Shown here piece after piece: positions 5,808 through 46,803 of a DNA stretch of 64,000 nucleotides. The DNA is taken from IMG/VR virus record IMGVR_UViG_3300001460_000004, positions 1 to 64,000 of that record. One strand, given 5' to 3'. Numbering within the stretch: the stretch's first letter is position 1; every line of letters starts with the position of its first letter. The translations under genes were made by a program, and so were the position numbers. Under the pieces are notes generated by a model that ran no database searches, had not been told where the DNA came from, and saw nothing but the letters and a program-made list of their open reading frames with translations.

Positions 5808-5897
5808 GGACAGTTGGCTGAGAGGTTTAAAGCACCGGTTTACTAAACCGACGAAGGTTAACGCCTTCCCAGGGTTCGAATCCCTGACTGTCCGCCA
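5808..5897 (+). tRNA. trnS: tRNA-Ser with anticodon ACT
   Basis: GGACAGT/ACTGTCC acceptor, G73, CCA; long variable arm GAAGG/CCTTC; anticodon loop TTACTAA. Confidence 0.85.
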
Positions 5898-6986: not shown

Positions 6987-7559
6987 ATGAATCAAACATT
7001 TATTCCTAAACGGTGGGAAAAGGAAGAGTATCAATCACGAGCTCACACTGTTTTTGAACAAGTTGATTCGTATCTTTCTACTCCCCCCAAACGTATACTT
7101 GATATTGGCTGTGGGTATGCATATATTAGTCAGCAGTTTCAAAAAAAGTATGGGACTGAGCTGTGGCTACTTGAAGGTGACTTTAATGCAACCAATGACC
7201 GCGAACGCAAAGCTAGTTGGGGTGATGTTGATACTATGAAGTTCTATTTGCCGGTTAAACAGTTAAAGAAATACTGGGACGATCAAAACATTTTGTATAA
7301 TTTTGTAGATGCTAACAATATACATATTAACAATAATTTAACATTTGATTTTGTTTGCAGTTGGTTAAGTTGCGGATATCATTATCCAGTTGCCACATAC
7401 CAATCATTAATTAAAAAACACACTAACAGTTCTAGTGTTATTATTATGGATATTAGAACAAAAACATTAAACAAGCAACAAAGTATAGAAGTTGTAAAGA
7501 AATTAGATCACGACAGTGGTAAAAGAAGTCGTTTACATTATAAATTTAAAACAAACTAG
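6987..7559 (+). CDS. class I SAM-dependent methyltransferase
   Basis: ILDIGCG motif I; FDFVCSW..C GYHY. Confidence 0.85.
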   Translation: MNQTFIPKRWEKEEYQSRAHTVFEQVDSYLSTPPKRILDIGCGYAYISQQFQKKYGTELWLLEGDFNATNDRERKASWGDVDTMKFYLPVKQLKKYWDDQNILYNFVDANNIHINNNLTFDFVCSWLSCGYHYPVATYQSLIKKHTNSSSVIIMDIRTKTLNKQQSIEVVKKLDHDSGKRSRLHYKFKTN

Positions 7560-8766
7560 TTAATTCAGGCAAGAAATCTTGTATGTTACACTTTTTCATT
7601 TTGTCCTGTAATACTATATTTTTCAAAGCTCTTTTAAACAACAGCTCGTCTTGAAATGAATGATTGTCTAAATGCATACGTATAGTTGCACTATCTGTAC
7701 ATGATAATATTGTTTGTTTTATATCTTCCCTTAATGCTCTTGCACTAAAATAATCAGGAGAATATACTGGATTTTCCAAAAATGGAATACTGTGATCATT
7801 AAACCATTGAGCTGTTTGTTCATGATACAAAATATTTAAGTTACTAATTGTATAACTTGCACTTACCATTATACCTTTATCTTGTGCAATTTTAATATTA
7901 TCAACTGTTTGATCCCAACTTAATGGATATCGCATGTATTCAAAAACTTTGCCAGTACCATCCATACTAAAACAAAAGTTTAAATTTGAAAATTGATCAA
8001 GTATGTGTTGTTGTTTTGTTGTTGGCACAAAAGATCCATTTGTTACAAAACTTATACAACACTCAGTGTTGCCAGCGGAAATTAGTTTGCGTAGTATATC
8101 CCAATTGGTTCTAATCATTGTAGGTTCGCCACCAGTAAATCCAATAAACTTTGCAGTTTTATAGTCAATGTCAATACTATCGTGATATTCTTTAACTAAG
8201 TTTACTTCGGGTATATTGGTATTGTTGTATGCGTTCTCTAGTTTTCCCCATCCACTACTACTACCTTTATTGCATGTAACACATGTAGCATTACAAAAAT
8301 TTCCAGCATCAATCTTATAATGAGTAATTACACTTTTACCAGTTTCAGCAATACGATACAATTCTAATAAATCAGTATTGGTGTAATAATCAAGTGTTGA
8401 ATTTTTAATCTGCCTATCGCTCATACGCCCAGCATCTTCTAAGCGCCAACATGCACTACACTGGTTATTTCGTTTGTTTTTTAACAAGTCTTGTTGTATT
8501 GATTCGATATCATACCCAGTTGGCAACTGACAGCAATGTACATCAGCAGGATATTCTCTACCATAAAATGGTAATACACAAAAATTTGTAATGTTGTCTA
8601 ATTGTTGCTGGTGCGATCCTAACATTTGATCTATTTCTTTAGCAACAAATGGTTCAAGATTAATACCAGATGCAAAATCTTTGTATGCAGGCCAATCCTC
8701 GCCAGACATTGCAACATAATCATTTTCGTTTATATTTTGATAGCGAGGTTTTTGTTTTACTTGCAT
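7546..8766 (-). CDS. radical SAM enzyme with N-terminal twitch/SPASM-like Cys cluster
   Basis: FCVLPF..CC..CSACW, CNATCVTC, GGEP, TNG, SMDG..YMRYP. Confidence 0.9.
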   Translation of the reverse strand: MQVKQKPRYQNINENDYVAMSGEDWPAYKDFASGINLEPFVAKEIDQMLGSHQQQLDNITNFCVLPFYGREYPADVHCCQLPTGYDIESIQQDLLKNKRNNQCSACWRLEDAGRMSDRQIKNSTLDYYTNTDLLELYRIAETGKSVITHYKIDAGNFCNATCVTCNKGSSSGWGKLENAYNNTNIPEVNLVKEYHDSIDIDYKTAKFIGFTGGEPTMIRTNWDILRKLISAGNTECCISFVTNGSFVPTTKQQHILDQFSNLNFCFSMDGTGKVFEYMRYPLSWDQTVDNIKIAQDKGIMVSASYTISNLNILYHEQTAQWFNDHSIPFLENPVYSPDYFSARALREDIKQTILSCTDSATIRMHLDNHSFQDELLFKRALKNIVLQDKMKKCNIQDFLPELTSLF

Positions 8767-8771
8767 TCGTA

Positions 8772-8807
8772 TATTTATAAGGTTATGAAAACCCTTGCGT
8801 ATAAATA
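8772..8807. promoter_or_regulatory. divergent pair of T4-type late promoters
   Basis: TATAAATA on the minus strand (8779-8772, facing the rSAM) and on the plus strand (8800-8807, facing the endolysin). Confidence 0.75.
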
Positions 8808-8838
8808 CTGCTGTAATGCAGTAGAAGGATTAATTTTA

Positions 8839-9696
8839 ATGTTAACATCAGAACAATTTGCAAAACTATTTCCTCGTTGTAAAGATCCAAGTGGATGGAC
8901 CGATGCAATGAACGAAGTATTTCCAAAGTATAGTATAGATACTCCCAAACGCATCGCATCATTTATTGCACAGTGTGGTCATGAAAGTGGTGGATGGAGA
9001 GTATTTTCAGAAAATCTCAACTATAGTGCTAAAGCACTTGATGCAATCTTTGGCAAATATTTTGTACGTGGAGGAAGAGACGCTCAGGAATATCATAGGC
9101 AACCTGAAAAAATAGCCAATGTTGTGTACGCTGGCCGTATGAGCAACGGTGATACAGCAAGTGGAGATGGTTGGTGCTATCGAGGGCGTGGTCCAATTCA
9201 GTTAACTGGGAAAGCAAACTATAGTGCGTTTAGCAGTGATATGGGAGTTAATGCTGTTGACAATCCCGATCAGGTTTCAGAGGACAAAAAAGTAGCACTA
9301 ATGAGTGCTATTTGGTATTGGAATAAAAACAACCTAAATCGTTATGCCGATAGTGGAGACATCAAAACAATGACCAAACGTATCAACGGTGGGTATATTG
9401 GACTTGAGGATCGTATACATCATTGGGAAATGGCTCTCGAAGCAATGGGAGAATCTGTTGCTCATCATGATAGCAGTGTAAGTGACGATGATCATGTTGA
9501 TGCAGAAAATTACGGTGTGTTGCGTAAAGGTATGCGGGGTGCAGGGGTAAAACTAATGCAAGAAGCATTGGGTATTGGCGCCGATGGAATATTTGGTCCG
9601 GGCACAGAAACAAAATTAAAAGAATGGCAAGCCAGTAAAGGGCTTGAGGCTGATGGAATTGCTGGTCCAGCAACATTAGGAGAACTTTTAGGATGA
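8839..9696 (+). CDS. endolysin: GH19 catalytic domain plus C-terminal peptidoglycan-binding domain
   Basis: AQCGHESGG, ENLNYS, YRGRGPIQLTG, TKRINGG; LRKGMRG..V..Q..LG..ADGIFGPGT. Confidence 0.92.
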   Translation: MLTSEQFAKLFPRCKDPSGWTDAMNEVFPKYSIDTPKRIASFIAQCGHESGGWRVFSENLNYSAKALDAIFGKYFVRGGRDAQEYHRQPEKIANVVYAGRMSNGDTASGDGWCYRGRGPIQLTGKANYSAFSSDMGVNAVDNPDQVSEDKKVALMSAIWYWNKNNLNRYADSGDIKTMTKRINGGYIGLEDRIHHWEMALEAMGESVAHHDSSVSDDDHVDAENYGVLRKGMRGAGVKLMQEALGIGADGIFGPGTETKLKEWQASKGLEADGIAGPATLGELLG

Positions 9697-10844: not shown

Positions 10845-13340
10845 TTAATTCCTCTCATATTGTTGTCTCACCATGTTGTAATGAGTTTCATCACTTGCAC
10901 CATTAAAAAATCGGGCTGAAGGATTGTCAAACACACGTTGATCTCCATAGATGTCTTTAGGTGCATAAAAGCTATTGTCTAGCATTTGCGGTTGTTGGTA
11001 TTGTCTTATTTTAGGATTATATCCTAACAAAGCAGCTCTTTCATCTTCTCCGGTATCACCTGCAAGTGCTGCTTCTACTAAATTATCCTCTAAATTTTGT
11101 TGCAATGCCAGTTGTTCTTCACTAACTTCGTTTAAATTATCTGAAATTGATTCATCTATTTGATTTTGTAGCACTTTATTAATTAGCGAGTTTAATTCTG
11201 TATTCAATGCTGCTACTACATCAAAAGTCAATACAGCATCATTTGTTGTTATTTCAGCAGTGTAACTACTAGGTGATCCATAATCAATTGTGCTAATGCC
11301 ACTGTTTAAATTATTTTCGCCTAACAATAATGATTCTGATTCACCTGATATCAGTTCAATATTGTCCCCAGATGCTTGTAAATTTGTTTGACCTGTTATG
11401 GTAAAATTGCTGTTGTTTGTATTAGATTGTTGCGATTGGGTTCCATCGCTGCTGTTATTTGAACTGTAGGATGTATCGTTTGATGTACTTCCATTATCGA
11501 TACTCGCACCACTAGAATTTTGCATATTATTGCTGTTACTATTGCTTACTTGAAAATTTCCACGGTTAGCATTGTTGTTGTTACCACTGGTTGCTAAACT
11601 ACTAGCAGCATTATCTTGTGCTATATTTTCAGCAACTCGGGCAACAGTTGCTGCCGCTGATAATGTCCTTCGTTGTTTTGAGCTTAATGTTGGTTTAGGT
11701 TCTTCAACTATTTCTGCAACTTCTTCCACATCAACATCGTCAACACTTGCTATATCAACTGATACTTCTTCAGCAATCTCTTCAACGGGTTCCTCTTTTA
11801 ATACTTTGGCAGTGTCTAATTCTTGAATTACCTCTACAGTTTCAGCTAATAATACTTCTTGTTCAATTATAACTTGTTCTTCGTTTAACTGTGTAGCGTT
11901 TTTAGGACCTGCATCCTGTACGGCTATTTCTTGTGGCAATGGTTCAGGATCATTGAGCTCAACACCAGTTGTTTGTTCAATATCAACACCAGAACTTTGT
12001 TCAATATCAACACCGGTTGTTGCTTGTACATCAATACCTTCGTTTAACTGTTCGGTAATTACGGATATTGGTTGTTGTTGCTGTTCCCTTTGTTCTATTG
12101 TTGTATCAAGTTGTGTGATGTCAACTGTGGTTAAATCAACAGTGTTGATATCAGCAACAATATCTCCAGTTGTCAAGTCAGGATTGGTATTCATATCAAT
12201 TGGATCAGTTATAACTACTATGGTACCTGCAGACTGATCTTCGGATAACCCAGTAGGCACAGTAGTATCAAAAATATCACTACCATCATTTGCAGTTTGT
12301 CCATCATCACTACCACTGGTTATAGTAGTATCGAGTCCTTGATTTTCTTCACTGATAATAACGTCAGTTTGTGTAGCAATTAACACAGTACCTTCATTAT
12401 TAACACTTAACGCAGAACCGCTACTGTCGGTGCTGTTTCCATTGCTACCACTTGTATCAAGTCCAGCTAATCCTTCATTTAATGCATCTGACATTGTGGT
12501 TGTGTTATCAAATGTTTCAGTGTTTTCACCGTTGTTAGCTGTTTGTGTACCATCATCGCTACCGGTTTCAGTGCCATCATCGTATTCATAACCAGGACAT
12601 GTTGGATTAAACTGCGGATCAATTTGACATTGTTGATCAAATTCACTTGTATTACCACTTGTATCTGGCGCTGTTTGTCCTGGATATAGATAATTAGGAT
12701 CAAAAGTATCAGTTGTTTCGGTTGTTCTGTAAACCATAATAAATTCTAAATCACCAATACCATCACCGGCAGTATCACCAGTCATAGTTGCTATTATTTC
12801 ATAGGTGTCTAACGAATTAACTCTATAAGGTGGTGGATTATCAATACTGTCTTGGTATCCATCTAATTCATTATAATTGGTATAATCTACTGAAGCACTA
12901 TAAATTGTACTGTTACCGTCTTTAATTTCCATCTTAAACATTAATTCAGCATTCGCACTTTTGTATACTTTGTATTCGTATTTCCAGCCTCTAATTTCTA
13001 AACCCAATCCGGCTTGCTGAAATGCTGCATTGAGTGCAATGGTGGCTTTGGCAAATTGTGTGGCGTATGGATCATCGTTGATAAATCTATATGAATTTGT
13101 GTTTGCATCGTAGTAAGCGGTGTCTTCGGTTAAATCAACGGCATCGGCACCATCTAGCATATTCATAGTGACAGTATTACACAGTATGTCATCAGTAAAA
13201 GTGGCTTGCCCATAGCCTGGAGCCAAATAGTCACCAGCGTAGTAACTTGCACCACAACTGTGAGTAGCAGTTTGTGCTAATGCATTAGAGCAATAAAAGG
13301 AGCAAACCAACACCGCCAACAGCTTTGAGGATTGTTGCAT
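10845..13340 (-). CDS. large secreted acidic low-complexity protein
   Basis: Signal peptide; CQIDPQFNPTCPGY motif; D/E/T/N/S-rich tracts. Confidence 0.75.
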   Translation of the reverse strand: MQQSSKLLAVLVCSFYCSNALAQTATHSCGASYYAGDYLAPGYGQATFTDDILCNTVTMNMLDGADAVDLTEDTAYYDANTNSYRFINDDPYATQFAKATIALNAAFQQAGLGLEIRGWKYEYKVYKSANAELMFKMEIKDGNSTIYSASVDYTNYNELDGYQDSIDNPPPYRVNSLDTYEIIATMTGDTAGDGIGDLEFIMVYRTTETTDTFDPNYLYPGQTAPDTSGNTSEFDQQCQIDPQFNPTCPGYEYDDGTETGSDDGTQTANNGENTETFDNTTTMSDALNEGLAGLDTSGSNGNSTDSSGSALSVNNEGTVLIATQTDVIISEENQGLDTTITSGSDDGQTANDGSDIFDTTVPTGLSEDQSAGTIVVITDPIDMNTNPDLTTGDIVADINTVDLTTVDITQLDTTIEQREQQQQPISVITEQLNEGIDVQATTGVDIEQSSGVDIEQTTGVELNDPEPLPQEIAVQDAGPKNATQLNEEQVIIEQEVLLAETVEVIQELDTAKVLKEEPVEEIAEEVSVDIASVDDVDVEEVAEIVEEPKPTLSSKQRRTLSAAATVARVAENIAQDNAASSLATSGNNNNANRGNFQVSNSNSNNMQNSSGASIDNGSTSNDTSYSSNNSSDGTQSQQSNTNNSNFTITGQTNLQASGDNIELISGESESLLLGENNLNSGISTIDYGSPSSYTAEITTNDAVLTFDVVAALNTELNSLINKVLQNQIDESISDNLNEVSEEQLALQQNLEDNLVEAALAGDTGEDERAALLGYNPKIRQYQQPQMLDNSFYAPKDIYGDQRVFDNPSARFFNGASDETHYNMVRQQYERN

Positions 13341-14439
13341 TATTATCTTCCTTTTCGGTTACTATTGCTTTATCGCTGGGATGTACAATAGGTTCCGGTT
13401 CTCCTTCTTTAACACCGTCCCATTCTTCTGTAGCTTCTTCGCCAATTTTACCTTTAAACGGACAAGGTGTACCAGCCATCATCATTGCATCAAAAATACG
13501 TTTGTCTTGACACATCAATGCAATAGCTGCAACTTTCATTCCCATATTGTACAGTGTTTTTGATTGCTTTAGCATTTCACAATTCATATCTCTTACATGA
13601 GATCCTGCGGCAATACCTACAATTTGTGTTTGTACTGACCCAGTAACACTGGTTGTACATGTATCATTGCCGCCTGCGTTTACTGTAGGTGCAATAGCAC
13701 TTGGGGGAGGTGCAATAATTGTTTGTTCCTGCTTTACATTGCTGTTGTTATTATTGTTATTAGTATTTTCAGCAGTGCTGTTAACTGTAGTATTGTTGGT
13801 ATTTTGGTTTGTGTTAGTATTTGTATTGGTGTTTACATTAGTGTTATTGCTAGTACTGTTTACTGTTTGGTCAACTGTACTTGTACTAGTACTGTTTACT
13901 GTTTGGTCAACTGTACTTGTGCTAGTGTTAACATTAGTATTGTTATTAGTGTTTGTGTTGGTTGTACCACCACTTAATATGTTATTATTGGTATTTGTGT
14001 TTGTGTTCGTACTGGTACCGGTGTAATTTGTAGTGTTATTATTTGTATTAGAATTTGTATTGGTGTTTACATTAGTGTTATTGTTGGTATTGGTACTAGT
14101 GCTTGTGTTTGTATTGGTGTTGTTGTTTGTATTGGTATTGTTGTTTGTATTGGTATTGGTTGTACCACCACTTAATATGTTATTATTGGTATTTGTGTTA
14201 GTGTTAGTGTTTGTATTGTTATTAGTGTTTGTGTTGGTACTGTTAATAGTAGTGTTATTAGTGTTGGTATTTGTACCTGTGGTAGTGACTGCACTAGTTG
14301 TTGAAGTAGTGCTATCAGTTAATACACAATCAATGCCGGTTGTTGCACAGTCTGATGTGTTAACAACTTGTGCTGACGTAGGATTTGTGTACAAAACAGC
14401 TATAAGAAAAACAGTAAAATAGGTTAGTTTAATATTCAT
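13285..14439 (-). CDS. secreted Thr/Asn-repeat protein with Cys-containing C-terminal domain and C-terminal hydrophobic tail
   Basis: Signal peptide; (TN)n repeats; PPPSAIAP..C..C..MCQD..GTPCP; GGAG RBS supports a start at 14439. Confidence 0.8.
   Translation of the reverse strand: MNIKLTYFTVFLIAVLYTNPTSAQVVNTSDCATTGIDCVLTDSTTSTTSAVTTTGTNTNTNNTTINSTNTNTNNNTNTNTNTNTNNNILSGGTTNTNTNNNTNTNNNTNTNTSTSTNTNNNTNVNTNTNSNTNNNTTNYTGTSTNTNTNTNNNILSGGTTNTNTNNNTNVNTSTSTVDQTVNSTSTSTVDQTVNSTSNNTNVNTNTNTNTNQNTNNTTVNSTAENTNNNNNNSNVKQEQTIIAPPPSAIAPTVNAGGNDTCTTSVTGSVQTQIVGIAAGSHVRDMNCEMLKQSKTLYNMGMKVAAIALMCQDKRIFDAMMMAGTPCPFKGKIGEEATEEWDGVKEGEPEPIVHPSDKAIVTEKEDNNATILKAVGGVGLLLLLL
13735..14310 (-). repeat. coding low-complexity repeats (TNTNTNNN; NILSGGTT x2; STSTVDQTVN x2)
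   Basis: Direct repeats visible in DNA and protein. Confidence 0.9.
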
Positions 14440-14458
14440 TAAAGTCGAGCTCCACAAT

Positions 14459-14584: not shown

Positions 14585-14613
14585 TTGACATTGCACGTTA
14601 AACGTGTTATATT
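14585..14613 (+). promoter_or_regulatory. sigma70-type promoter
   Basis: TTGACA-N17-TATATT with extended TG. Confidence 0.75.
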
Positions 14614-14638: not shown

Positions 14639-14875
14639 ATGTCAAATGTCACTCATAATAATTTAATTAACGCTGTTGGAAATGCATACGATGCAGCTAT
14701 TTTATTAGCAAAACGAACACGTGATTTAAAAAATGGGTCAAATTCTTTACTTGAATACACAGAATTTGATACTCATCGGATTGTGGCTACACGTGAAATT
14801 GAACAGGGTATTATTACTATGCAATATTTTTACGAACAGAATAACAGTGACCTACTCGAAGATGAAATGTTTTAA
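14639..14875 (+). CDS. rpoZ: RNA polymerase omega subunit homolog
   Basis: VT....NAVGNAYDAAILLAKRTRDL..G....A.REIEQG aligns with the omega pattern (VT.....GNRFDLVLVAARRARQ..G..ALREIEEG); AGGA RBS. Confidence 0.7.
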   Translation: MSNVTHNNLINAVGNAYDAAILLAKRTRDLKNGSNSLLEYTEFDTHRIVATREIEQGIITMQYFYEQNNSDLLEDEMF

Positions 14876-14952: not shown

Positions 14953-15174
14953 ATGGTTGTTGCCAAAAGCATGGAAAGATTAACGAATGAAGATTTAAAG
15001 TATCTCGAAGTATTACTTGGTAGGGAATTTGCAACTGAAAGCGATAGATGTAAATCTTGGCAACAAAAAAACAAATACGACAAGCCTTTTGGAAAACAAA
15101 ATCAAATATTAAATTGTTTAAATGCAATTAGAGATTGCCGAAGAGTTAAAGAAATGCTGGACGCCAAATGGTAA
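14953..15174 (+). CDS. hypothetical protein
   Basis: AAGGA RBS; TAAATA upstream. Confidence 0.55.
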   Translation: MVVAKSMERLTNEDLKYLEVLLGREFATESDRCKSWQQKNKYDKPFGKQNQILNCLNAIRDCRRVKEMLDAKW

Positions 15175-15193
15175 AAACTACAAAAAATTTTTC

Positions 15194-15224
15194 TTGACAT
15201 CTTGAACAATTTATGTTATAAATA
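15194..15224 (+). promoter_or_regulatory. overlapping sigma70 and late promoter for the tmRNA
   Basis: TTGACA(15194)-N17-TATAAATA(15217-15224). Confidence 0.75.
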
Positions 15225-15228
15225 ACAT

Positions 15229-15540
15229 TGTAACGTTGAAGCAATTCAAACGCTATACAGGACTCGGGGGCAGTACCCGACGCCTCCACCATAAACACAT
15301 CTAGACTGGTTTTTATATCTGATCAGATAGATGCATTGACAACTTAGGTGTGTTTATGATGGGGGCGAACTAGGATCGACTGGTGGTTAATAGAGTTAGT
15401 GGAGTTATCCGGATCTAAGCACGGTTATCGCGAAGAAAACTTATAATTGCAAATGACAATTATGCGCCAGCAATGGCAATTGCAGCCTAATTAGGTATGC
15501 GGGGTATGGGTTCCACCTAGCAACAGAACGGGCCTGCTAC
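15229..15540 (+). ncRNA. ssrA: two-piece (circularly permuted) tmRNA, alphaproteobacterial type; tag ANDNYAPAMAIAA
   Basis: Acceptor piece ends CGCCTCCACCA (15291) with T-arm GGGGCAGTACCC; intervening hairpin ATAAACACATCTA/TAGGTGTGTTTAT; coding piece starts GGGGGCGAA (15361) giving G3.U70; tag ORF 15449-15490. Outer ends approximate. Confidence 0.93.
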
Positions 15541-15561
15541 AATTTTACACACCGTAAACGG

Positions 15562-15590
15562 TTGACTTTCCACCTTTTCTATGCTATATA
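15562..15590 (+). promoter_or_regulatory. sigma70-type promoter
   Basis: TTGACT-N17-TATATA with extended TG. Confidence 0.6.
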
Positions 15591-15630
15591 TTATAGTATA
15601 AACAGACACAAACACACTGAAAGAAATAAT

Positions 15631-15996
15631 ATGAATAAATCTCCAGAACCCATCGGTTGGGCAAATACACTAACATCACTTACTGGCGAAGTTAAGTTCC
15701 TTTGGAGTTTAGTGATGACAATTGAAAATTCACCACTACGAAAATTAGATCCAATAGTTGCTCATATGGTATTCCAGACCTTAGCATTTGTTTGGTCAGG
15801 TATTTTTGGCCTAATGGTTGGCAGTATTTGGGCAGTAGGCATAAGCGGTATAGCACATGTGATTTTTATTGCTGGTATTGTTATTACTGCTACAACATTC
15901 CGCCAAGCAGATCAAAATCCAAATGTTGTAAACAAGATGTTTACTCCACGTGACAATGTTACTAGTGGACGTATGAACGGCGGGGAACATGAGTAA
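15631..15996 (+). CDS. hypothetical membrane protein (2 TM)
   Basis: Hydrophobic helices; start reassigned to the ATG downstream of the promoter. Confidence 0.65.
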   Translation: MNKSPEPIGWANTLTSLTGEVKFLWSLVMTIENSPLRKLDPIVAHMVFQTLAFVWSGIFGLMVGSIWAVGISGIAHVIFIAGIVITATTFRQADQNPNVVNKMFTPRDNVTSGRMNGGEHE

Positions 15997-16841: not shown

Positions 16842-17285
16842 ATGAATAAATCAATATTAATAGTTATGATTGTAACATTTTTTGCTACTATGTTTGTACA
16901 AGCTGCGAATGCAGAAGATATAACTATTGAAATGCTTAACAAGCGTGATGACGGTGCTAAAATGGTATTCAGTGAAGATATTGCAAGAATTGACGTTGGT
17001 GATACTATTACATGGGTACCAACTGCAAAAGGACACAATGTACATTTTACTGCGGGTCCGGACGGATGGGATATTCCTAAGAAGTCAAAGAACAACAAAG
17101 AAGTTGAAATTACATTTGACACACCTGGCGTATACTTTTATCAGTGTACACCACACAAAGGCATGGGCATGATTGCTCTTGTTGTTGTAGGAGACGACAC
17201 ATCAAATGCAGATACAATTATGAAAGCAAGCAAAGCCAAAGGCAAAAGCAAAAAGAAACTTAAAGGATTACTTGAAGAACTATGA
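16842..17285 (+). CDS. pseudoazurin (type I blue copper protein)
   Basis: Signal peptide; MLNK...MVF...GDTITW...GHN; CTPHKGMGM copper ligands. Confidence 0.92.
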   Translation: MNKSILIVMIVTFFATMFVQAANAEDITIEMLNKRDDGAKMVFSEDIARIDVGDTITWVPTAKGHNVHFTAGPDGWDIPKKSKNNKEVEITFDTPGVYFYQCTPHKGMGMIALVVVGDDTSNADTIMKASKAKGKSKKKLKGLLEEL

Positions 17286-17686
17286 GTTTTGTAAAACATA
17301 TTCCTGAGTTTTGTTTGAGTCATTGGTTACTGCGAATACCGCTAGCCATTGTATTCATACAACAGGGATTGAGTAAATTTCCAGTAATACTAGAAGATGC
17401 CGAAGCATTTGAACTTCCATACATAGTATGGTGGTTCGCTGCATATGGAGAACTAGGCGCAGGTATTGGTTTACTTGTNGCTGGTTTATTAGCATCTTGG
17501 TCTTTGACAAGTGACTATGGCGATATGCTAACACGTTTTTGTGGTATTACAATTTGTAGTATTATGACAGGTGTTATCTGGGTAGGACAACCAGAAAGTT
17601 TCTGGGACGTTATACTATATGACAACCTCCACGTACTGTTATGGGTAGGTGGATTATTTTTTGCTCTAAGAGGTAATAGAACATGA
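17282..17686 (+). CDS. DoxX-family membrane protein
   Basis: LLRIPLAIVFIQQGLSKF; ELGAGIGLL; four TM segments. Confidence 0.8.
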   Translation: MSFVKHIPEFCLSHWLLRIPLAIVFIQQGLSKFPVILEDAEAFELPYIVWWFAAYGELGAGIGLLXAGLLASWSLTSDYGDMLTRFCGITICSIMTGVIWVGQPESFWDVILYDNLHVLLWVGGLFFALRGNRT

Positions 17687-40132: not shown

Positions 40133-41432
40133 TTGATTTCCACCACTCTAACAACTCATTATCTTGTTGTTGTAATATTTGTTCCATTCCATACGAATCT
40201 TTACGTATTTCTTCAAGTCTAAGTATTCTCTTTTTTCCTTTACTAAGTCCTTGTTGCCATTCATTAGGCCATTGTTCCATAAACACAGGTCTTGTTTTTA
40301 ACTGCTCAAGTGTATCAATTAATGTTTGATTGCTTAACTGTGGTATTATTTTATCAATTTGTAAGTGCAATAAATCTCGAGGTAAAGCCAAAGGACTTAA
40401 TATAATGTCAGGCGTGAAGCTGAATACTACTTTACTTAGTATTCCAACTCCAAGNTGATTAGCAAAGTNGTCAATGTTTACCATCTCAAACAATCCAGGC
40501 AATGTTAGTGTAAAATCTATACGCATCTGCCTGGGATGCTTGGCTAATTCAACTCCTTGTTTGAAGTTTTCTTTCCATTTTTCCCAGACGAGACCGGTTC
40601 TAATATATTCCCCAATTCGTCCAGTTCCGTCAATACTTGCACACACTTGCCAATCCCTAATTTTAGCAAGTATATCAGTATATAAGTTAATACCGCGATA
40701 TTCAATCCTACTAAGATTTGTATTGTATCTTGCATAAATGTTTGGTCCGTCTCCTAAATCAATTATTTGTTTCATGTACCGCCAATGCTGTTCATACATT
40801 AACGGTTCGCCACCTACCCAGTATATTTCTTCAATTCTATGCTCTTGTACTGCTTGTAAAAATTCAGCTTCAACTTGTGTGTCTTGGAACTTGCTAATTT
40901 GTTGACGAACTGACTTTTGCATCCAGTTATTTTTGGGATCATCCCAATTAACCATATTGTTTTGTTTTTGTTCTGATTCCCAACTACTGCTCAACATGTC
41001 GCCACACATTCGACATTTGAAGTTGCATAGATTACTAAAACGATAATCCCAACTAACTGGTTTTAATGTTGTATGCCCGTTTTCGTCAGTGTTCTCCCAT
41101 ATGCTTTCGTATTTTTGTTTAAACAAATGCCAAAAATAGTCCTTGTATACATCAGTATTTAACAACTTATTGTTACACACATCACACTCTGACAGTGTTT
41201 CCCCATTCATCATACGCTTTCGGACACTTTGCATATGATCACTATTCCAGTGTTGTTCTAGTGTCAATGGCTTGTATTCCCCAGTGCCACTTTCTGTATC
41301 AATATACTGCTCAAAATTTTGTGCAGGCTCTCTACTAGCACAGCACAATCTACGCTCAGTTTGTGGGCTAAGATATGTGTGAGTCCACGGTGCTAAACAA
41401 AGGCTTTCGGGTTTGATATCAGGAACCTTCAT
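40125..41432 (-). CDS. N-terminal twitch radical SAM enzyme
   Basis: CLAPW..CC..CDVC; CNFKCRMC; GGEP; SIDG..YIR. Confidence 0.93.
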   Translation of the reverse strand: MKVPDIKPESLCLAPWTHTYLSPQTERRLCCASREPAQNFEQYIDTESGTGEYKPLTLEQHWNSDHMQSVRKRMMNGETLSECDVCNNKLLNTDVYKDYFWHLFKQKYESIWENTDENGHTTLKPVSWDYRFSNLCNFKCRMCGDMLSSSWESEQKQNNMVNWDDPKNNWMQKSVRQQISKFQDTQVEAEFLQAVQEHRIEEIYWVGGEPLMYEQHWRYMKQIIDLGDGPNIYARYNTNLSRIEYRGINLYTDILAKIRDWQVCASIDGTGRIGEYIRTGLVWEKWKENFKQGVELAKHPRQMRIDFTLTLPGLFEMVNIDXFANXLGVGILSKVVFSFTPDIILSPLALPRDLLHLQIDKIIPQLSNQTLIDTLEQLKTRPVFMEQWPNEWQQGLSKGKKRILRLEEIRKDSYGMEQILQQQDNELLEWWKSIA

Positions 41433-42630
41433 AAGCAATAGCCTTTGCAAATTCACTATGATGCGTTGCTAGGTTTTGTTTGCGGCGATTGTCTAATAAT
41501 GCAACTTGCTCTCTTAATACGTTGCCATCCAAACTGTTGCCGCCTTTAATAAAATCAATAATTCGATCAAATTCCAAACGGTGAGACTTGCTCACTTTAG
41601 CACTGCGTAGGTTGTCTATTGCTAATTTTTTTGCATACTCTGGCAATGTGCTTATACTAAAATAATAGGCTTCGTGCATCATATTCCAATAAACAAAATC
41701 AAATCCTTGTTGATCAATCCAATTGGCAAGACCTTCGAGATAAAAAATATTAAATACATTTACCGTACTACACACTTGCAACTGTAAATTTGGCATAGTT
41801 GTTTTAAGATCAACATAACGACTTATGTTATGTTGTACTTCTTTCCATACTGCATTAGTGCGTTGATATTCAAATCGCTCGTTGAGGTCGTCAATACTAA
41901 ATGCAATTTCAACTGTTTTAAAATGTTTCCAAATTTCTGGGCCTTGCTTTGGATATTGTGTTCCATTAGTATTATAATGTATTTCTACATTTTTTGCAAC
42001 CCCTTTTTTAACAATACTTGACAAAAGATCAAAATGTTCTTGAATCATAAACGGCTCGCCGCCTGTAAATTCAATGTATTTGATATCATCAACTATAGTG
42101 TCCATTTGTTCCCAAAAAGTTTGACTTTTTCTTGGCCATGCACCTTTTTGTAACATAGTATGATGAAAACTTCCTTTGCGTTCTGCTTTATTTGTAAACT
42201 TTAATTCTTCTGCAGCAAATTGACTACTGCTCCAGCTACCGCATATACGACATTTTAAGTTACATATATTTCCAAGTTTTAAATCTAAAAACTGTAGCCC
42301 TTTACTTTTGTTGGTCCATTCTGTATCTGGTATTACATGCTTTAATCTGTCTAATGTGTGCATCCTCTTACTTGTACGCCCACTTGCTTCTTCATTCCAA
42401 CATTTACGACAGGTTGGTGGTTTTTCTTTGTTTAAAAACTCCTCACGCAACTTAGTCATATAATTACCATCAAGTACGTTGTTGAGATCAGCACTTTGTA
42501 AATCAAATTTATTACCGTTGCTGTCCGTTATTTCATCTTCTGCTAAACAACACGGGCGTAAACTTCCAATTGGACTAGTTTCTAAACTAGTCCAGGGTAA
42601 CACACAAAAATTATCGTGTGGTATTTTCAT
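41419..42630 (-). CDS. N-terminal twitch radical SAM enzyme
   Basis: CVLPW..PCC..CRKCW; CNLKCRIC; GGEP; TNG. Confidence 0.93.
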   Translation of the reverse strand: MKIPHDNFCVLPWTSLETSPIGSLRPCCLAEDEITDSNGNKFDLQSADLNNVLDGNYMTKLREEFLNKEKPPTCRKCWNEEASGRTSKRMHTLDRLKHVIPDTEWTNKSKGLQFLDLKLGNICNLKCRICGSWSSSQFAAEELKFTNKAERKGSFHHTMLQKGAWPRKSQTFWEQMDTIVDDIKYIEFTGGEPFMIQEHFDLLSSIVKKGVAKNVEIHYNTNGTQYPKQGPEIWKHFKTVEIAFSIDDLNERFEYQRTNAVWKEVQHNISRYVDLKTTMPNLQLQVCSTVNVFNIFYLEGLANWIDQQGFDFVYWNMMHEAYYFSISTLPEYAKKLAIDNLRSAKVSKSHRLEFDRIIDFIKGGNSLDGNVLREQVALLDNRRKQNLATHHSEFAKAIAYEGS

Positions 42631-44333
42631 CGTATTACTTCCAACTCTGGTAAAATATCTAATGCACCCTCTTTACGTAATACATCAAGTTGATCAGTTC
42701 TACGCCAAAATTCTGGAATTAAATGACTGTGATCTCCATTTTTTAAAAAGTTAATAGCACTTTCAAATCCAACTGTTGCCCTGTTTAGTTTATCGTGGGG
42801 TCGTAACCATTCTAAATGTTTTTCATAACGATCAATCAATTCTTTTTTAACATTGTTGGGTGCAATGTCAATTCTAAAATGTGCAGGATCTTGTAGGCAA
42901 TTTACATTCAAGTCTTGATGTCTAATATATCCTTTTTCNACCCAGCTTTTATGAAAATCAGTAATGTGCCAAGCATTCATTATGCTAAGTGTGGGACTGA
43001 CGTAAAAGTCTACATTTGGGCAAACTTTCATCATTAATTCCCTGTTTCGTTCTACCACATCCCATTTAGTACCTTTACGTATGTACTCGGCTTGCGGGCC
43101 CATTCCGTCTAAACTTGCTCCTACTGCTACACTATCAAATTTTTTCCAGTAATCAAACACTTCTCGATCTTTTAGTTTAGTATGTGTAAAGTTTGTATTG
43201 TACACAAGACGCACGTCAAACTTTCCTCGCTTTTCAAGTTCATCTAAAATATTATAATGTTCTTTCATCATCAGTGGCTCGCCACCTGCAAAGTAAATTT
43301 GTTCTACAAATTCTAAGTGTGGTTCTAATTGCTCCCACATATCCATTTCAGTACGACCAGCATAGTTAAGTACCTGATTTTGTTTTTTCCATTCAGGCCC
43401 GGCTAGTGCAGCTTGATCTTTATACCAACTACTACTAAAAATATGCCCACAACTTCTACAACTCAAATTACACAAATTGCTAAATCGAATATCCCAATAG
43501 GTCATTTCAAATTTATCAGCTGACCCATCTGATTGAGTAGCTAATGCACGTTCAATATGATGCCCGTGGTGTTTGTTTGCACTTTTTCTACCACTAAAAA
43601 ATCCACTGTTTTCACTCTCATAGCAACGCACACATGCTTTGCTTGGTTTTTCATTTAGCATGTTATTGCGTATTTCACGCATGCCAGGTCCATTCCAAAT
43701 TTCTTCAAGTGTATTTTCTTTTGTGTTTCCTACATCACCATCATGTTCTGCCATACAACAAGGATATGCACCGCCAGTAGGCCATGCATGCAAATGTACC
43801 CAAGGATACATGCAAAACATTTTACTTTCGTCTAATAAAAAGTTCTCACGATTGCTTAATTGTTTTAAATCTATTTTAAGAGGATTAGCACTTCCATATT
43901 CGTATATTTCTTTTTCACTAAGTGGATGTTTGTTTATTTTATGTTTTTTCCATCCTTCATCGATGCATGCTTTTACAGTAATTGGAACTTCGTCTGAACT
44001 CATAGCTTTCAGTAATTCAAACTCGTCTCCAATATGAGGATTTGATGAAAGTAATATTACAAAAAAATTACTAATGTCTTGTTGATTTAATTCATTTTGT
44101 AAATTTCGTAATACTAAACCAACTTTACTGTTTGGTGTGTATAAATCTCCTGTACTATGTTTGACAATAATGCGATCTTTATTTTGATACTTGTCTTTTC
44201 GTATCGATGCAATAGTATTAGCTAGAGCTGTTTGTGAACTTTCGTAATCTGTAAAGTCCCAAACATCTAAATCAATTCGTCCAACAATGTTGTAAACTTT
44301 TTCTAAGTCATTTAGTCTGTTTATTATTTTCAT
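42627..44333 (-). CDS. twitch radical SAM enzyme with an extra ~170-aa N-terminal domain
   Basis: CMYPW..PCC..CVRC; CNLSCRSC; GGEP; SLDG..YIR. Confidence 0.93.
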   Translation of the reverse strand: MKIINRLNDLEKVYNIVGRIDLDVWDFTDYESSQTALANTIASIRKDKYQNKDRIIVKHSTGDLYTPNSKVGLVLRNLQNELNQQDISNFFVILLSSNPHIGDEFELLKAMSSDEVPITVKACIDEGWKKHKINKHPLSEKEIYEYGSANPLKIDLKQLSNRENFLLDESKMFCMYPWVHLHAWPTGGAYPCCMAEHDGDVGNTKENTLEEIWNGPGMREIRNNMLNEKPSKACVRCYESENSGFFSGRKSANKHHGHHIERALATQSDGSADKFEMTYWDIRFSNLCNLSCRSCGHIFSSSWYKDQAALAGPEWKKQNQVLNYAGRTEMDMWEQLEPHLEFVEQIYFAGGEPLMMKEHYNILDELEKRGKFDVRLVYNTNFTHTKLKDREVFDYWKKFDSVAVGASLDGMGPQAEYIRKGTKWDVVERNRELMMKVCPNVDFYVSPTLSIMNAWHITDFHKSWXEKGYIRHQDLNVNCLQDPAHFRIDIAPNNVKKELIDRYEKHLEWLRPHDKLNRATVGFESAINFLKNGDHSHLIPEFWRRTDQLDVLRKEGALDILPELEVIR

Positions 44334-45667
44334 AGTGTATTGTACCATTCGGATATTTCTGGGAATGTGTCCTGGAAATTCTTATCACGACGAACATCAT
44401 ATTGTGAAAAGAAATGTTTGAAGTCGTTGTGTAATTTGGGCATATCAAAACTATCACTATGTGGAGTTTTAACCACGTCCAAATAATCAATTAGTCTTTG
44501 TGTATGATTAATTTCATGTTCGTGTATAATATCATCGCGGTGTGAATACTTGTCTAACCAATTTTGCAATCTTTCTTTAAATCTTGTTCTCAAATAATTA
44601 GGCATTATCAAAGCACTTTGAAAACTAGGAAAACGTAATATATTAAGTGTGAAATTAACTCTTTCCTTTCCATATTGTTCTTTTAATGTTACCATCTCAT
44701 CTAAGTATTCAGGTAAACTTTCTAAACACAATGCATTAATTGTACACATACTGTGTACTGCGGTTAACTTACTGTTTAACAATACATGCATATTATCTAT
44801 CCATTGTTGATAATCTAATCCATCACGTATGTATTCAGCTTGGGTACCAACAGCTTCACAACTGGTATAAATTTCTACACTAGGAAGATCCTCTGTAGCA
44901 TCTAAAAACTCTTGAACTTTTTTAGTATCAAAGCCTAGATTGCTATTAATTGCTAATTTTGTTTTTGACTTGCCTCTATTTTCTTTAAACCATTCTATTA
45001 ACTTCCAAGTATGGCCACTCATCAATGGTTCTCCGCCTGTAATACGTAGTTCATCTAACGTGCGATGTAAGTCACTTTCCCACCATTTAAAAAATGCTTC
45101 AATATAAGGATTTGTTTCAGTATATTTATACAGCTGACTACTGGCATGCTCATGAGTAAAATGGTTTCTACCATCACTAGCAAGTTCTGTATAAGCACCG
45201 TTTTTCTTAATGTCTTTGACCCATGTTGTGCTAAACGCTGGGTTACAGTAGCTACATGCAAACTGACATGTCCTATCAAATGCAATTTCTAATGTTTTTA
45301 AATTAACATCTTCTTCAACTGGGGTTTGATATGCTTGTATTAATTCTTGCTCAGGATAAATTTTACTCTTATATACACGATCGCTTATGTTGTTGCGATC
45401 AATATCTTCAATTTTCCAACAATACTCACAACCTTTTGGACGCTTACCGCATTTCATTAAACGCCTATCGTCTTTCTTTTCTGGTGTATTGTGCAACATT
45501 TTTGGATTTTCAATCACAGCATTTACATCAATTTTATGTGCAGGCGGATGATGGCAACTAGTTGTCATCCCACTTCCTAACCATATAGTAGCGTTATACC
45601 ATTTTGCACCGCAAAATGAAGGACTTATTTTATCAAGTACTTGCTGGCGAAATTCAAGATCATTCAT
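44330..45667 (-). CDS. N-terminal twitch radical SAM enzyme
   Basis: CGAKW..SCHHP..CEYCW; CQFACSYC; GGEP. Confidence 0.93.
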   Translation of the reverse strand: MNDLEFRQQVLDKISPSFCGAKWYNATIWLGSGMTTSCHHPPAHKIDVNAVIENPKMLHNTPEKKDDRRLMKCGKRPKGCEYCWKIEDIDRNNISDRVYKSKIYPEQELIQAYQTPVEEDVNLKTLEIAFDRTCQFACSYCNPAFSTTWVKDIKKNGAYTELASDGRNHFTHEHASSQLYKYTETNPYIEAFFKWWESDLHRTLDELRITGGEPLMSGHTWKLIEWFKENRGKSKTKLAINSNLGFDTKKVQEFLDATEDLPSVEIYTSCEAVGTQAEYIRDGLDYQQWIDNMHVLLNSKLTAVHSMCTINALCLESLPEYLDEMVTLKEQYGKERVNFTLNILRFPSFQSALIMPNYLRTRFKERLQNWLDKYSHRDDIIHEHEINHTQRLIDYLDVVKTPHSDSFDMPKLHNDFKHFFSQYDVRRDKNFQDTFPEISEWYNTL

Positions 45668-46803
45668 TATAATGTTTCAATCCATTTCTTAAAATTATTT
45701 GGAAATTCATCTTTTAGCTGCTGGCTATATTCTAAAAATCTTTGTTGATTATGCAGGCATATATTTTTTGCTTGTTGTTGAAAAGTATTTAAGTCGCTTT
45801 TACACATAGATAAAATAGTTTGTGCTATTCCTTCGGCTCTAGTCTCGCCATCTTCTATACTATCCCAACTTTCATCAATGAGACTGCTAAACGTTTGAAA
45901 CCCTAAATTATGCAAATGTTTGTAGAAATACTGACTACCCATTGCAACAAACGGGTGCCCAATAATTATAGGTTTCCAAATTTTTTCAGTTCTAAACATT
46001 GGGGATTCTTGGAAAATAGTTTCACTTACTAAACTAAAATATGTATCAATATAAGGTTCGGGTTTTATGTATGCCTCTCCCCATTCAGCATGTCCACCAA
46101 CTTTAAACAAATGACTTTTTATATTACGATCAATTGAAGGTCTAGCTATACGCTGTGCATAACGGTCAACTTCATACTGTTTTGGTAATAACACAATTGG
46201 TTCTATTTCATCCATTAAGTTTGTATCAGCTTCGTATACCTGCATGCCACCACGTGGTGCTGCACGTTCATGTAGGTTAGTGTACAAACTGTCTTGCAAT
46301 AAATTAAGTTGCCGTAAACGTGCTAGCATCCATTTGCGATGTGTTCGCATACGCCCGTTTAAAAATAAAAATGTATATGGTTTATCTTTTTTGTTATGTA
46401 TTGCACTCACACTTGACATTGCTTGAATGTTTTCATCAAAGTTGCTTAACTTAACTGCAAAGTTATCGTGATTATAGTAATCAACATCTTCTGCTATTTC
46501 ACCTCCACTAATAACTGACATTTTTCGATCTAACACTAAATCTAAAATATTTAAATGCACAAATTGCCCTGACATTGTAGTGCTACCTTCTGCAGGATTA
46601 CTAAACACAAACTTTACACCTTGATCAATAAAACTTCTTATTTTTTCATTGTGTTCTGCAACAGTCGTCCTGCCAACAATGTAAGTTGCATTAACATCAA
46701 ATTCCTCTTTGCCAAAATCAAAAAAGTCACTATGTGCTAACGGAGCTAGTAATTCTGGCACTTCACAATTATAATCAATCAATAGTTTATGTGTTGTCAG
46801 CAT
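45667..46803 (-). CDS. putative glycosyltransferase (GT-B/GT10-like)
   Basis: LVSETIF..RTEKIWKPI..HPF..GFQTF..DESWD. Confidence 0.6.
   Translation of the reverse strand: MLTTHKLLIDYNCEVPELLAPLAHSDFFDFGKEEFDVNATYIVGRTTVAEHNEKIRSFIDQGVKFVFSNPAEGSTTMSGQFVHLNILDLVLDRKMSVISGGEIAEDVDYYNHDNFAVKLSNFDENIQAMSSVSAIHNKKDKPYTFLFLNGRMRTHRKWMLARLRQLNLLQDSLYTNLHERAAPRGGMQVYEADTNLMDEIEPIVLLPKQYEVDRYAQRIARPSIDRNIKSHLFKVGGHAEWGEAYIKPEPYIDTYFSLVSETIFQESPMFRTEKIWKPIIIGHPFVAMGSQYFYKHLHNLGFQTFSSLIDESWDSIEDGETRAEGIAQTILSMCKSDLNTFQQQAKNICLHNQQRFLEYSQQLKDEFPNNFKKWIETL

What the first reader, a model, noticed from the sequence alone, without database searches (positions are those of the whole stretch)
15194..15540. 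Intact two-piece (permuted) tmRNA in a phage
The acceptor piece comes first, then an intervening hairpin, then the coding piece, which is the alphaproteobacterial arrangement. G3.U70 and CCA are intact. The tag ANDNYAPAMAIAA resembles Rhodobacteraceae tags (ANDNRAPVALAA type) and keeps the ClpXP-type AA end. The promoter satisfies both sigma70 and phage late consensus, suggesting expression throughout infection. No integrase or att context is visible. It is also a strong host predictor.
Basis: partly seen in the sequence, partly recalled or inferred. Interest (0 to 1): 0.7.

Follow-up and report, generated by a model that had tools for sequence, protein, structure and literature searches.

The report
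Two-piece tmRNA gene in marine jumbo phage
A large marine phage carries a complete, structurally conserved gene for a two-piece ribosome-rescue RNA (tmRNA) under its own conserved promoter; such genes are already known from other marine phages, and this one does not identify the host.

Summary
ARAGORN calls a permuted tmRNA with tag ANDNYAPAMAIAA. Rfam alpha_tmRNA scores 132 bits (cut-off 50) over 15190-15538. G3.U70, A73, encoded CCA, the T arm, the P2 helices, the PK1 stem, the tag frame and a 3' hairpin are all intact. All are supported by covariation across 114 related genes on viral contigs.

The gene lies inside a 230-kb fragment (CheckV 66%) of a jumbo myovirus. The genome has portal, sheath, baseplate and TerL genes; its TerL is 49-53% identical to those of PA5oct, Phosso and Atu_ph07. 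No integrase, no att-like repeat and no SmpB were found.

The promoter TTGACA-N17-TATAAATA is conserved in position in most phage relatives, including Melnitz. It is absent from 17 cellular alphaproteobacterial genes, which instead carry a 5' hairpin that the phage genes lack.

The closest relatives are all phage DNA, including two contigs filed in bacterial MAGs. No close cellular donor was found, so "strong host predictor" is not supported. Melnitz carries an alpha-type tmRNA but infects a non-alphaproteobacterium.

Two-piece tmRNAs in marine phages were already described (Buchholz 2022), so this is a new member of a known kind. Processing, charging and tagging remain untested.

The parts
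15194..15224 (+). Composite promoter: -35 TTGACA (15194-15199), 17-nt spacer with TG at 15214-15215, and -10/late-type box TATAAATA (15217-15224). The predicted start is near G15230.
   Evidence: Sequence and motif scan. The same layout sits at the same distance in 22 of 26 close relatives, including Melnitz. ATAAATA is at that position in 77 of 115 viral loci and in 0 of 17 cellular genes. NATAAATA is enriched upstream of genes and sits 25-45 nt before structural genes.
15230..15291 (+). Predicted acceptor piece: P2 strands 15230-15234, 15243-15246 and 15254-15260; T arm 15264-15280; acceptor 3' strand 15281-15287 (U70 = U15285); A73 15288; encoded CCA 15289-15291.
   Evidence: Rfam alignments. 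Pair counts over 114 related genes.
15292..15360 (+). Intervening segment predicted to be removed from the precursor. The hairpin spans 15292-15356, followed by a 4-nt leader before G1.
   Evidence: Fold at -18.5 kcal/mol, z -3.34. The length of this segment ranges from 9 to 499 nt among relatives and its sequence is not conserved.
15361..15535 (+). Predicted coding piece: acceptor 5' strand 15361-15367 (G3 = G15363), P2 partner strands 15380-15385, 15394-15397 and 15404-15408, PK1 stem 15409-15412 / 15421-15424, the tag frame and the 3' hairpin.
   Evidence: Rfam, covariation, alignment of relatives.
15449..15490 (+). Tag reading frame: resume codon GCA, peptide ANDNYAPAMAIAA, stop TAA.
   Evidence: ARAGORN. 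Relatives keep the frame, with synonymous changes and tags ending LAA, MAA, IAA or VAA.
15508..15535 (+). 3'-terminal hairpin: a 7-position stem, 6 of 7 positions paired here, around the conserved loop ACCUAGCAACAGAA.
   Evidence: The loop motif is present in 95 of 120 loci, with 58 distinct stem versions. Mean paired positions are 5.46 of 7, against 3.17 when partners are shuffled.

Best explanation
This is a complete, phage-encoded, alpha-type two-piece tmRNA gene (ssrA) in a marine jumbo myovirus.

Shown:
- The gene order is acceptor piece, spacer hairpin, coding piece.
- All tRNA-like and mRNA-like elements are intact and under structural selection.
- The gene sits among phage genes and has a promoter conserved among phage relatives.

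Inferred:
- Transcription starts near G15230 from a composite promoter that host sigma70 RNA polymerase could use early and a T4-like late apparatus could use late.
- Host RNase P and 3' trimming remove the spacer.
- The two RNAs stay base-paired through P1 and P2.
- Host AlaRS charges the RNA via G3.U70 and A73.
- Host SmpB and EF-Tu deliver it to ribosomes stalled on broken mRNAs. The phage has no SmpB in the 230 kb held.
- This frees ribosomes during infection and marks the truncated products with ANDNYAPAMAIAA for host proteases.

The gene belongs to a tmRNA lineage carried on virus contigs rather than being a recent copy of a host gene.
For: - Identity and integrity.
- Base-pair support: the acceptor stem is paired in 114 of 114 genes with compensatory changes at positions 5/68 and 6/67, and G3.U70 is invariant. 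The T stem, P2a, P2c and PK1 stem all covary.
- 3' hairpin covariation.
- Tag frame kept, with synonymous changes.
- Phage context: endolysin; baseplate, portal and sheath; TerL, helicases and RNR; TerL nearest to PA5oct, Phosso and Atu_ph07.
- Not an integration scar: no integrase and no repeated pieces.
- Conserved in relatives. A 335-kb contig carries TerL at 59% identity and sheath at 46-52% identity and holds the same kind of tmRNA, while the MAG it is filed in has its own one-piece tmRNA and SmpB on other contigs. A 30-kb contig is colinear with 182-203 kb of this genome.
- Promoter conservation.
- Precedent: Melnitz, Mosig and Phosso carry alpha-type tmRNA and no SmpB (PMC9004378).
Against: - There is no direct evidence of transcription, processing, charging or tagging. 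RNA-library contigs cover only conserved blocks, come from relatives, and some include promoter DNA.
- The -10 hexamer TATAAA lacks the usual final T.
- No gp33 homologue was found with two queries, and gp55 was not searched, so late-promoter use is unproven.
- The record is only about 66% complete, so the absence of SmpB, integrase and ClpP applies to the 230 kb held. The 335-kb relative also lacks SmpB on its contig.
- The host is unknown, so compatibility with host SmpB cannot be judged.
Confidence: 0.8

Rival explanations
1. The region is a host chromosome fragment: an assembly chimera, a prophage boundary or an att remnant of a host ssrA gene, rather than a phage gene.
For: tmRNA genes are common integration sites. 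Some IMG/VR contigs that carry tmRNA are probably prophage ends.
Against: - The gene is complete, not a 3' fragment.
- It lies 15 kb inside a 230-kb contig of even 33-39% GC, with phage genes on both sides.
- No integrase and no duplicated piece were found.
- Related phages carry the same gene with the same promoter at other genome positions.
- It lacks the 5' hairpin seen in all 17 cellular genes examined.
Confidence: 0.03
2. The RNA works mainly as a tagging device rather than a rescue device. The phage uses it to mark host nascent chains for proteolysis to recycle amino acids, or its altered tag changes the fate of tagged proteins.
For: Buchholz et al. raise this idea for Melnitz (PMC9004378). 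Tag modules differ among otherwise near-identical genes: L102 shares 98% of the acceptor piece with this gene but encodes ANENFALAA. That suggests the tag itself is under selection or is exchanged.
Against: Tagging and rescue are two sides of one reaction, so this is a matter of emphasis. The tag keeps the ordinary ANDN start and hydrophobic-AA end. No phage ClpP was found.
Confidence: 0.15
3. The RNA is a decoy. It titrates host SmpB, or competes with host tmRNA, to blunt host sensing of stalled ribosomes or a defence that depends on trans-translation.
For: No phage SmpB was found, so the RNA must compete for the host's. The promoter looks strong.
Against: A decoy would not need an intact, conserved tag frame, resume context and 3' hairpin.
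Confidence: 0.05

Closest known systems
ssrA of Methylophilales phage Melnitz and Pelagibacter phage Mosig (Buchholz et al. 2022, PMC9004378)
   Same: An alpha-type two-piece tmRNA inside a lytic marine myovirus with no integrase and no SmpB. Rfam alpha_tmRNA scores 106.7 bits (Melnitz) and 67.6 bits (Mosig). Melnitz has the same TTGACA-N17-TATAAATA promoter at the same distance. Its tag ANDNYVPVDYALAA is of the same style.
   Different: Those phages are about 141-kb Kyanoviridae. This one is a jumbo phage of a different TerL lineage. No glutamine riboswitch was found here, and the gene is not next to a gp33-like gene. Sequence similarity to Melnitz is limited to conserved blocks.
Unannotated tmRNA of Sinorhizobium jumbo phage Phosso (PV764938.1, 349553-350242)
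   Same: A jumbo myovirus with related TerL (48.9% identity). It has an alpha-type two-piece tmRNA at 108 bits and no SmpB. Its coding piece is 75.9% identical over the matched parts. Its 3' hairpin and upstream TTGACT...TGTAAATA are similar.
   Different: The spacer is about 410 nt, against 69 nt here. The tag is ANDNVSTKVALAA. The phage comes from soil, has a higher-GC genome and has a known alphaproteobacterial host.
Cellular two-piece tmRNA of Alphaproteobacteria (Caulobacter type; Keiler, Shapiro and Williams 2000, as cited in PMC9004378; Rfam RF01849)
   Same: The same permuted order, tRNA-like domain, P2 helices, ANDN tag start and conserved 3' loop. The Rfam model matches end to end. 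Caulobacter is the one control genome that matches the family.
   Different: The 5' hairpin of the acceptor piece (model positions about 40-52) is missing here and in the phage relatives, but present in all 17 cellular genes examined. The promoter box is TATAAATA here, against TATATA or TATATT in the cellular genes. Cellular genes fall on one side of a single branch in a 131-sequence tree (SH-aLRT 81). The best cellular identity over the coding piece is about 68%.
tmRNAs of huge phages (Al-Shayeb et al. 2020, PMC7162821)
   Same: Large phage genomes that carry tmRNA among translation-related genes.
   Different: That survey also reports SmpB in huge phages. None was found here. It does not describe the two-piece form or its promoter.

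Membership tests
Two-piece (permuted) tmRNA, alpha type (Rfam RF01849 / RF04321) | Score above the curated family threshold over the full model | tested here: met
   132 bits against 50 over model positions 1-355. 110.7 bits against 47 over model positions 1-213.
Two-piece (permuted) tmRNA, alpha type (Rfam RF01849 / RF04321) | Permuted gene order: acceptor piece ending in CCA lies upstream of the coding piece that starts with the acceptor 5' strand | tested here: met
   CCA at 15289-15291 and G1 at 15361. ARAGORN gives a permuted call.
Two-piece (permuted) tmRNA, alpha type (Rfam RF01849 / RF04321) | tRNA-like domain: 7-bp acceptor stem with G3.U70, A73 and a T arm | tested here: met
   G15363.U15285, A15288, T arm 15264-15280. 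The stem is paired in 114 of 114 relatives with compensatory changes.
Two-piece (permuted) tmRNA, alpha type (Rfam RF01849 / RF04321) | Tag reading frame with an Ala resume codon, ending in hydrophobic-Ala-Ala plus stop | tested here: met
   GCA at 15449, tag ANDNYAPAMAIAA, TAA at 15488. The frame is conserved in relatives.
Two-piece (permuted) tmRNA, alpha type (Rfam RF01849 / RF04321) | Inter-piece helices (P2), PK1 stem and 3' hairpin supported by covariation | tested here: met
   P2b is poorly aligned, so its support is weak.
Two-piece (permuted) tmRNA, alpha type (Rfam RF01849 / RF04321) | 5' hairpin of the acceptor piece, typical of cellular alphaproteobacterial members | tested here: not met
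   Deleted in the Rfam alignment. Present in 17 of 17 cellular genes and absent from the phage relatives. This is a typical feature, not an essential one.
Two-piece (permuted) tmRNA, alpha type (Rfam RF01849 / RF04321) | Precursor is cut into two RNAs that stay paired | not testable with these tools
   RNA-library contigs were uninformative.
Two-piece (permuted) tmRNA, alpha type (Rfam RF01849 / RF04321) | Alanylation, SmpB binding and trans-translation activity | not testable with these tools
   Only the identity elements are seen in the sequence.
Complete trans-translation system (tmRNA plus SmpB) encoded by the phage | SmpB gene in the same genome | tested here: not met
   No PF01668 match in the 230 kb held. 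None on the 335-kb relative contig. None in Phosso, Melnitz or Mosig.
Integration-site remnant of host ssrA (att fragment) | Partial 3' gene fragment, an integrase nearby and a duplicated core sequence | tested here: not met
   The gene is complete, there is no integrase and no repeat of 15 bases or more.
Melnitz-type phage ssrA module (Buchholz 2022) | Glutamine riboswitch associated with ssrA | tested here: not met
   No riboswitch family was found in the window at gathering threshold, or near the gene at E up to 1.
Melnitz-type phage ssrA module (Buchholz 2022) | Sigma70-like early promoter directly upstream | tested here: met
   TTGACA-N17-TATAAATA is present here and in Melnitz at the same distance.
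Melnitz-type phage ssrA module (Buchholz 2022) | Late-transcription coactivator (gp33) gene directly downstream | tested here: not met
   The downstream ORFs have no such match. tblastn with Melnitz and Mosig gp33 finds nothing in the genome.

The most novel reading that the evidence does not exclude
The alpha-like two-piece tmRNAs on marine virus contigs may form a lineage of their own. The shared features would be a lost 5' hairpin, a conserved composite early/late promoter that starts transcription exactly at the first paired base, exchangeable tag modules, and movement between unrelated myovirus groups and between genome positions. Such a lineage would work with whatever SmpB the host supplies, even across bacterial classes. 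In that case these genes would track phage history rather than host identity.
Probability: 0.45. Interest if true: 0.55.

Novelty: new member of a known kind. Interest (0 to 1): 0.35.

Why it matters
The finding adds a jumbo-phage lineage to the marine phages known to carry their own ribosome-rescue RNA. It also shows that the gene, its structure and its promoter are conserved across many phage contigs.

Three practical points follow:
- An alpha-type tmRNA on a phage should not be used as a host marker on its own.
- Phage contigs carrying such genes are filed inside bacterial MAGs in reference genome sets. One gives a Marinimicrobia-labelled genome a second, alpha-type tmRNA.
- At least one cultured jumbo phage (Phosso) has an unannotated tmRNA.

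The conserved promoter and the trimmed 5' end give clear handles for experiments on why lytic phages invest in trans-translation.

Tried and rejected
- blastn of the region against the phage collection at the default E-value found nothing. Relaxing E to 10 recovered Melnitz, Phosso, Mosig and several phages of Rhodobacter, Ruegeria, Mesorhizobium and Erythrobacter through conserved blocks only.
- The single genome contigs pattern scan returned only two hits. Both turned out to be phage DNA filed in MAGs, so it gave no host.
- A class-level search of 400 genomes and an order-level search of 42 genomes found no close cellular tmRNA.
- Metatranscriptome contigs laid on 15100-15700 cover only the conserved tmRNA blocks, come from relatives, and in part include promoter DNA. 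This is no evidence for or against processing.
- gp33 was not found by tblastn with the Melnitz and Mosig proteins. gp55 was not searched.
- No ClpP, no SmpB and no integrase were found in the 230 kb held.
- An apparent internal promoter in the spacer (TTGACA ... TATGAT) has only a 13-nt spacing and lies in the non-conserved intervening segment. I rejected it.
- The protein atlas search of the RpoZ-like neighbour gave no usable host signal.
- A genome-wide count of exact TATAAATA is below the Markov expectation. Enrichment appears only when upstream regions are compared with the whole genome.

Full report
**The observation**

ARAGORN reports a single permuted tmRNA in the window, at 15197-15581 on the + strand, with tag ANDNYAPAMAIAA. 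Rfam's alpha_tmRNA model matches 15190-15538 from first to last model position at 132 bits (cut-off 50, E 8.6e-36). The newer tmRNA_permuted model matches 15230-15490 at 110.7 bits.

- The acceptor 3' strand is 15281-15287, followed by A15288 and an encoded CCA at 15289-15291.
- A 69-nt spacer (15292-15360) follows.
- The coding piece begins GGGGGCG at 15361, so G15363 pairs with U15285 (G3.U70).
- The tag frame runs from GCA at 15449 to TAA at 15488-15490.

The spacer folds into a hairpin with a 13-bp outer stem (-18.5 kcal/mol, z -3.3).

**Is it in a phage?**

The window is the first 64 kb of a 230,036-bp IMG/VR virus record, linear, with a CheckV completeness estimate of 66%. GC content is an even 33-39% across the window.

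PHROG scans find these phage genes:
- an endolysin at 8626-9696;
- a baseplate wedge, a baseplate hub/lysozyme, a portal and a 1133-aa tail sheath;
- a large terminase, helicases and ribonucleotide reductase.

The terminase is closest to the jumbo myoviruses PA5oct (52%), Atu_ph07 (53%) and Phosso (49%), then to Rak2-like phages.

The genome as held has no integrase, no SmpB and no ClpP. It has three tRNAs besides the tmRNA. No piece of the tmRNA is repeated elsewhere. The gene therefore sits well inside a jumbo myovirus and is not an att scar or a host flank.

**Is it under selection?**

In 117 of them an acceptor-piece anchor lies upstream in the permuted order, with spacers of 9-499 nt.

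I aligned 114 of these genes and counted pairs for the helices that Rfam assigns to this gene:
- The acceptor stem is paired in every sequence, apart from one C-A mismatch at 6/67.
- G3.U70 is invariant.
- Positions 5/68 and 6/67 show compensatory changes.
- The two outer T-stem pairs occur as CG, TA, GC and AT.
- P2c, P2a (among close relatives) and the PK1 stem covary.
- P2b aligns poorly and is not informative.

Downstream of the tag, a stem closes the conserved loop ACCUNGMAACAGAA. The loop motif is present in 95 loci, with 58 different stem versions. On average 5.46 of 7 positions pair, against 3.17 when partners are shuffled. In the window this hairpin is 15508-15535, which sets the 3' end near 15535-15540.

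Tags in close relatives keep the frame with synonymous changes: ANDNYAPEMALAA, ANDNYAPEMAMAA, ANDNYQPEMALAA and others. This is the pattern expected of a working tmRNA.

**Relatives**

The most similar genes are all on virus-like DNA. They share 82-98% identity over the acceptor piece and 77-88% over the coding piece.

My one scan of bacterial and archaeal genomes returned two contigs.
- PBPT01000016.1 is 335 kb and is filed in a "Neomarinimicrobiota" MAG. It carries a terminase 59% identical and a sheath 46-52% identical to this phage's. The MAG has its own one-piece tmRNA and its SmpB on other contigs. The contig is therefore a related jumbo phage, and at 335 kb it fits the size implied by 230 kb at 66% completeness.
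- PALK01000009.1 is 30 kb and is filed in a "Rickettsiales" MAG. It is colinear with 182-203 kb of this genome. None of the other 41 genomes of that MAG's order has a similar coding piece.

The tmRNA sits at different places in these relatives: next to RNR genes in some, next to an SNase-like nuclease and a cell-wall hydrolase in others, and syntenic with this window in a few.

One relative, L102, has a 98% identical acceptor piece but a different tag, ANENFALAA. This suggests that modules are exchanged.

**Cellular comparison and host**

I sampled 400 genomes from the class of the "Rickettsiales" MAG, which are Alphaproteobacteria by that label. Only the universally conserved T-arm/acceptor block matches cellular genes. 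The best cellular identity over the coding piece is about 68%.

All 17 cellular genes I examined carry a 5' hairpin before the P2 strand and a TATATA or TATATT box. The phage gene and its relatives lack the hairpin. In a quick maximum-likelihood tree of 131 sequences the 17 cellular genes fall on one side of a single branch (SH-aLRT 81). The window's gene lies in a 12-member clade with the two misfiled contigs (SH-aLRT 96).

Three caveats apply. The cellular sample is small and unnamed. Base composition differs between the two sets. The two sets were picked with slightly different patterns.

Together with the published case of Melnitz, the gene cannot be called a strong host predictor. Melnitz infects the OM43 clade, yet carries an alpha-type tmRNA closer to those of SAR11 and its phages (PMC9004378). 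At most, the gene points to an alphaproteobacterial origin of the lineage. The host of this phage remains unknown.

**Promoter**

The sequence is TTGACA (15194-15199), a 17-nt spacer ending in TG-N, then TATAAATA (15217-24). The tool's sigma70 scan does not list the site because the hexamer TATAAA lacks the final T.

Three results give the site weight:
- NATAAATA-type words are enriched 13-19 fold in the 80 nt upstream of predicted genes. They sit 25-45 nt before the start codons of the baseplate wedge, the sheath, tail-fibre-like proteins and other large late-type genes, without a -35 box. This is the T4-type late-promoter pattern, known from T4 biology.
- The composite with a -35 box occurs only twice in this genome, at the tmRNA and at 143443.
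- The same composite lies at the same distance from the T arm in 22 of 26 close relatives, including Melnitz, while the surrounding sequence differs. ATAAATA is at that position in 77 of 115 viral loci and in none of the 17 cellular genes.

Either promoter reading would start transcription near G15230, the first paired base of P2a, so the acceptor piece would need no 5' trimming. Expression both early and late is a reasonable inference, but it is not shown. I found no gp33 homologue and did not search for gp55.

**Mechanism**

The most likely mechanism has these steps, all inferred:
1. The precursor is transcribed from about 15230 to about 15540.
2. Host RNase P cuts before G15361, and 3' trimming exposes the encoded CCA.
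3. The two pieces stay joined by P1 and P2.
4. Host AlaRS charges the RNA through G3.U70 and A73.
5. Host SmpB and EF-Tu bring it to ribosomes stalled on truncated messages. Such messages should be plentiful when a lytic phage degrades host RNA.
6. Translation resumes at GCA 15449 and ends at TAA 15488, releasing the ribosome and tagging the peptide.

What is shown is the intact and conserved anatomy, not the activity. RNA-library contigs laid on the region came from relatives and in part include promoter DNA, so they say nothing about processing.

**What is already known**

- Buchholz et al. (PMC9004378) described the two-piece ssrA of Melnitz. They counted 53 two-piece tmRNAs among 133 unique phage tmRNAs, 50 of them from marine or aquatic phages.
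- Al-Shayeb et al. (PMC7162821) list tmRNAs and SmpB among the translation genes of huge phages.
- In the phage collection, alpha-type tmRNAs score above threshold in Melnitz, Mosig and Phosso, but not in Atu_ph07 or PA5oct. None of the five has SmpB.

This finding is therefore a new member of a known kind. The points that go somewhat beyond the literature I read are the jumbo-phage lineage, the conserved composite promoter together with loss of the 5' hairpin, the apparent separation from cellular genes, and the misfiled phage contigs.

**Verdict**

The core interpretation is right, the host-prediction claim is not supported, and the overall interest is moderate to low.

Noticed in passing
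window 14639-14875 (+): The ORF just upstream of the tmRNA promoter looks like an RNA polymerase omega subunit (RpoZ/Rpb6). Pfam PF01192 scores 27.4 bits against a cut-off of 26. The atlas feature search gives omega-family clusters (scores below 0.9, so a lead only). The atlas structure search gives a cluster whose commonest phylum is Uroviricota. It has its own TTGACA-N17-TATATT promoter at 14585.
   Followed up: partly
G001:C57 = PBPT01000016.1 (335,231 bp); G002:C8 = PALK01000009.1 (29,883 bp): Two contigs filed in bacterial MAGs ('Candidatus Neomarinimicrobiota' and 'Rickettsiales bacterium SAT45') are DNA of jumbo phages related to this one. The first gives that MAG a second, alpha-type tmRNA besides its own one-piece tmRNA.
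   Followed up: yes
Sinorhizobium phage Phosso PV764938.1, 349553-350242 (locus L176): This cultured 469-kb jumbo phage has an alpha-type two-piece tmRNA (108 bits) with a spacer of about 410 nt. The tag read from the alignment is ANDNVSTKVALAA. The record does not annotate it.
   Followed up: partly
L102 (IMG/VR contig) compared with window 15230-15540: L102 has a 98% identical acceptor piece and a near-identical P2/PK1 region, but a different tag module (ANENFALAA) and a different 3' hairpin stem. This suggests recombination between tmRNA modules of different phages.
   Followed up: partly
window 5808-5897 (+) and G000 219186-219260 (+): ARAGORN calls the phage tRNAs as tRNA-Ser with anticodon ACT and tRNA-Pro with anticodon AGG. 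Both have A at the wobble position, which is unusual in bacteria. A tRNA-Trp(CCA) lies at 1741-1814.
   Followed up: no
window 41419-48220 (-) and 7546-8766 (-): There is a run of at least four radical-SAM-like proteins (41419-42630, 42627-44348, 44330-45667, 46787-48220) plus a fifth at 7546-8766. Nearby are an epimerase, an aminotransferase, a carbamoyltransferase and an AMP-binding enzyme (22-38 kb). This may be a large modification or biosynthesis cluster.
   Followed up: no
window 16842-17285 (+) and 17282-17686 (+): A secreted cupredoxin (plastocyanin/azurin family, Pfam 63 bits) is followed by a DoxX-like membrane protein, about 1.3 kb downstream of the tmRNA. These look like auxiliary metabolic genes.
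   Followed up: no
window 13285-14457 (-): A 390-aa ORF has a signal-peptide-like start and long Thr/Asn repeats (TNTN...). It matches only an unknown-function PHROG.
   Followed up: no
window 56335-63999 (-): A giant ORF of more than 2450 aa ends just after a TATAAATA box at 56331. It was not analysed.
   Followed up: no
G000 143443-143473 (+): This is the only other TTGACA-N17-TATAAATA composite promoter in the genome. It lies in front of a cell-wall hydrolase gene (143503 onwards) just upstream of the terminase. Homologues of this gene and of the SNase-like gene at 141879-142346 lie next to the tmRNA in several relatives.
   Followed up: partly
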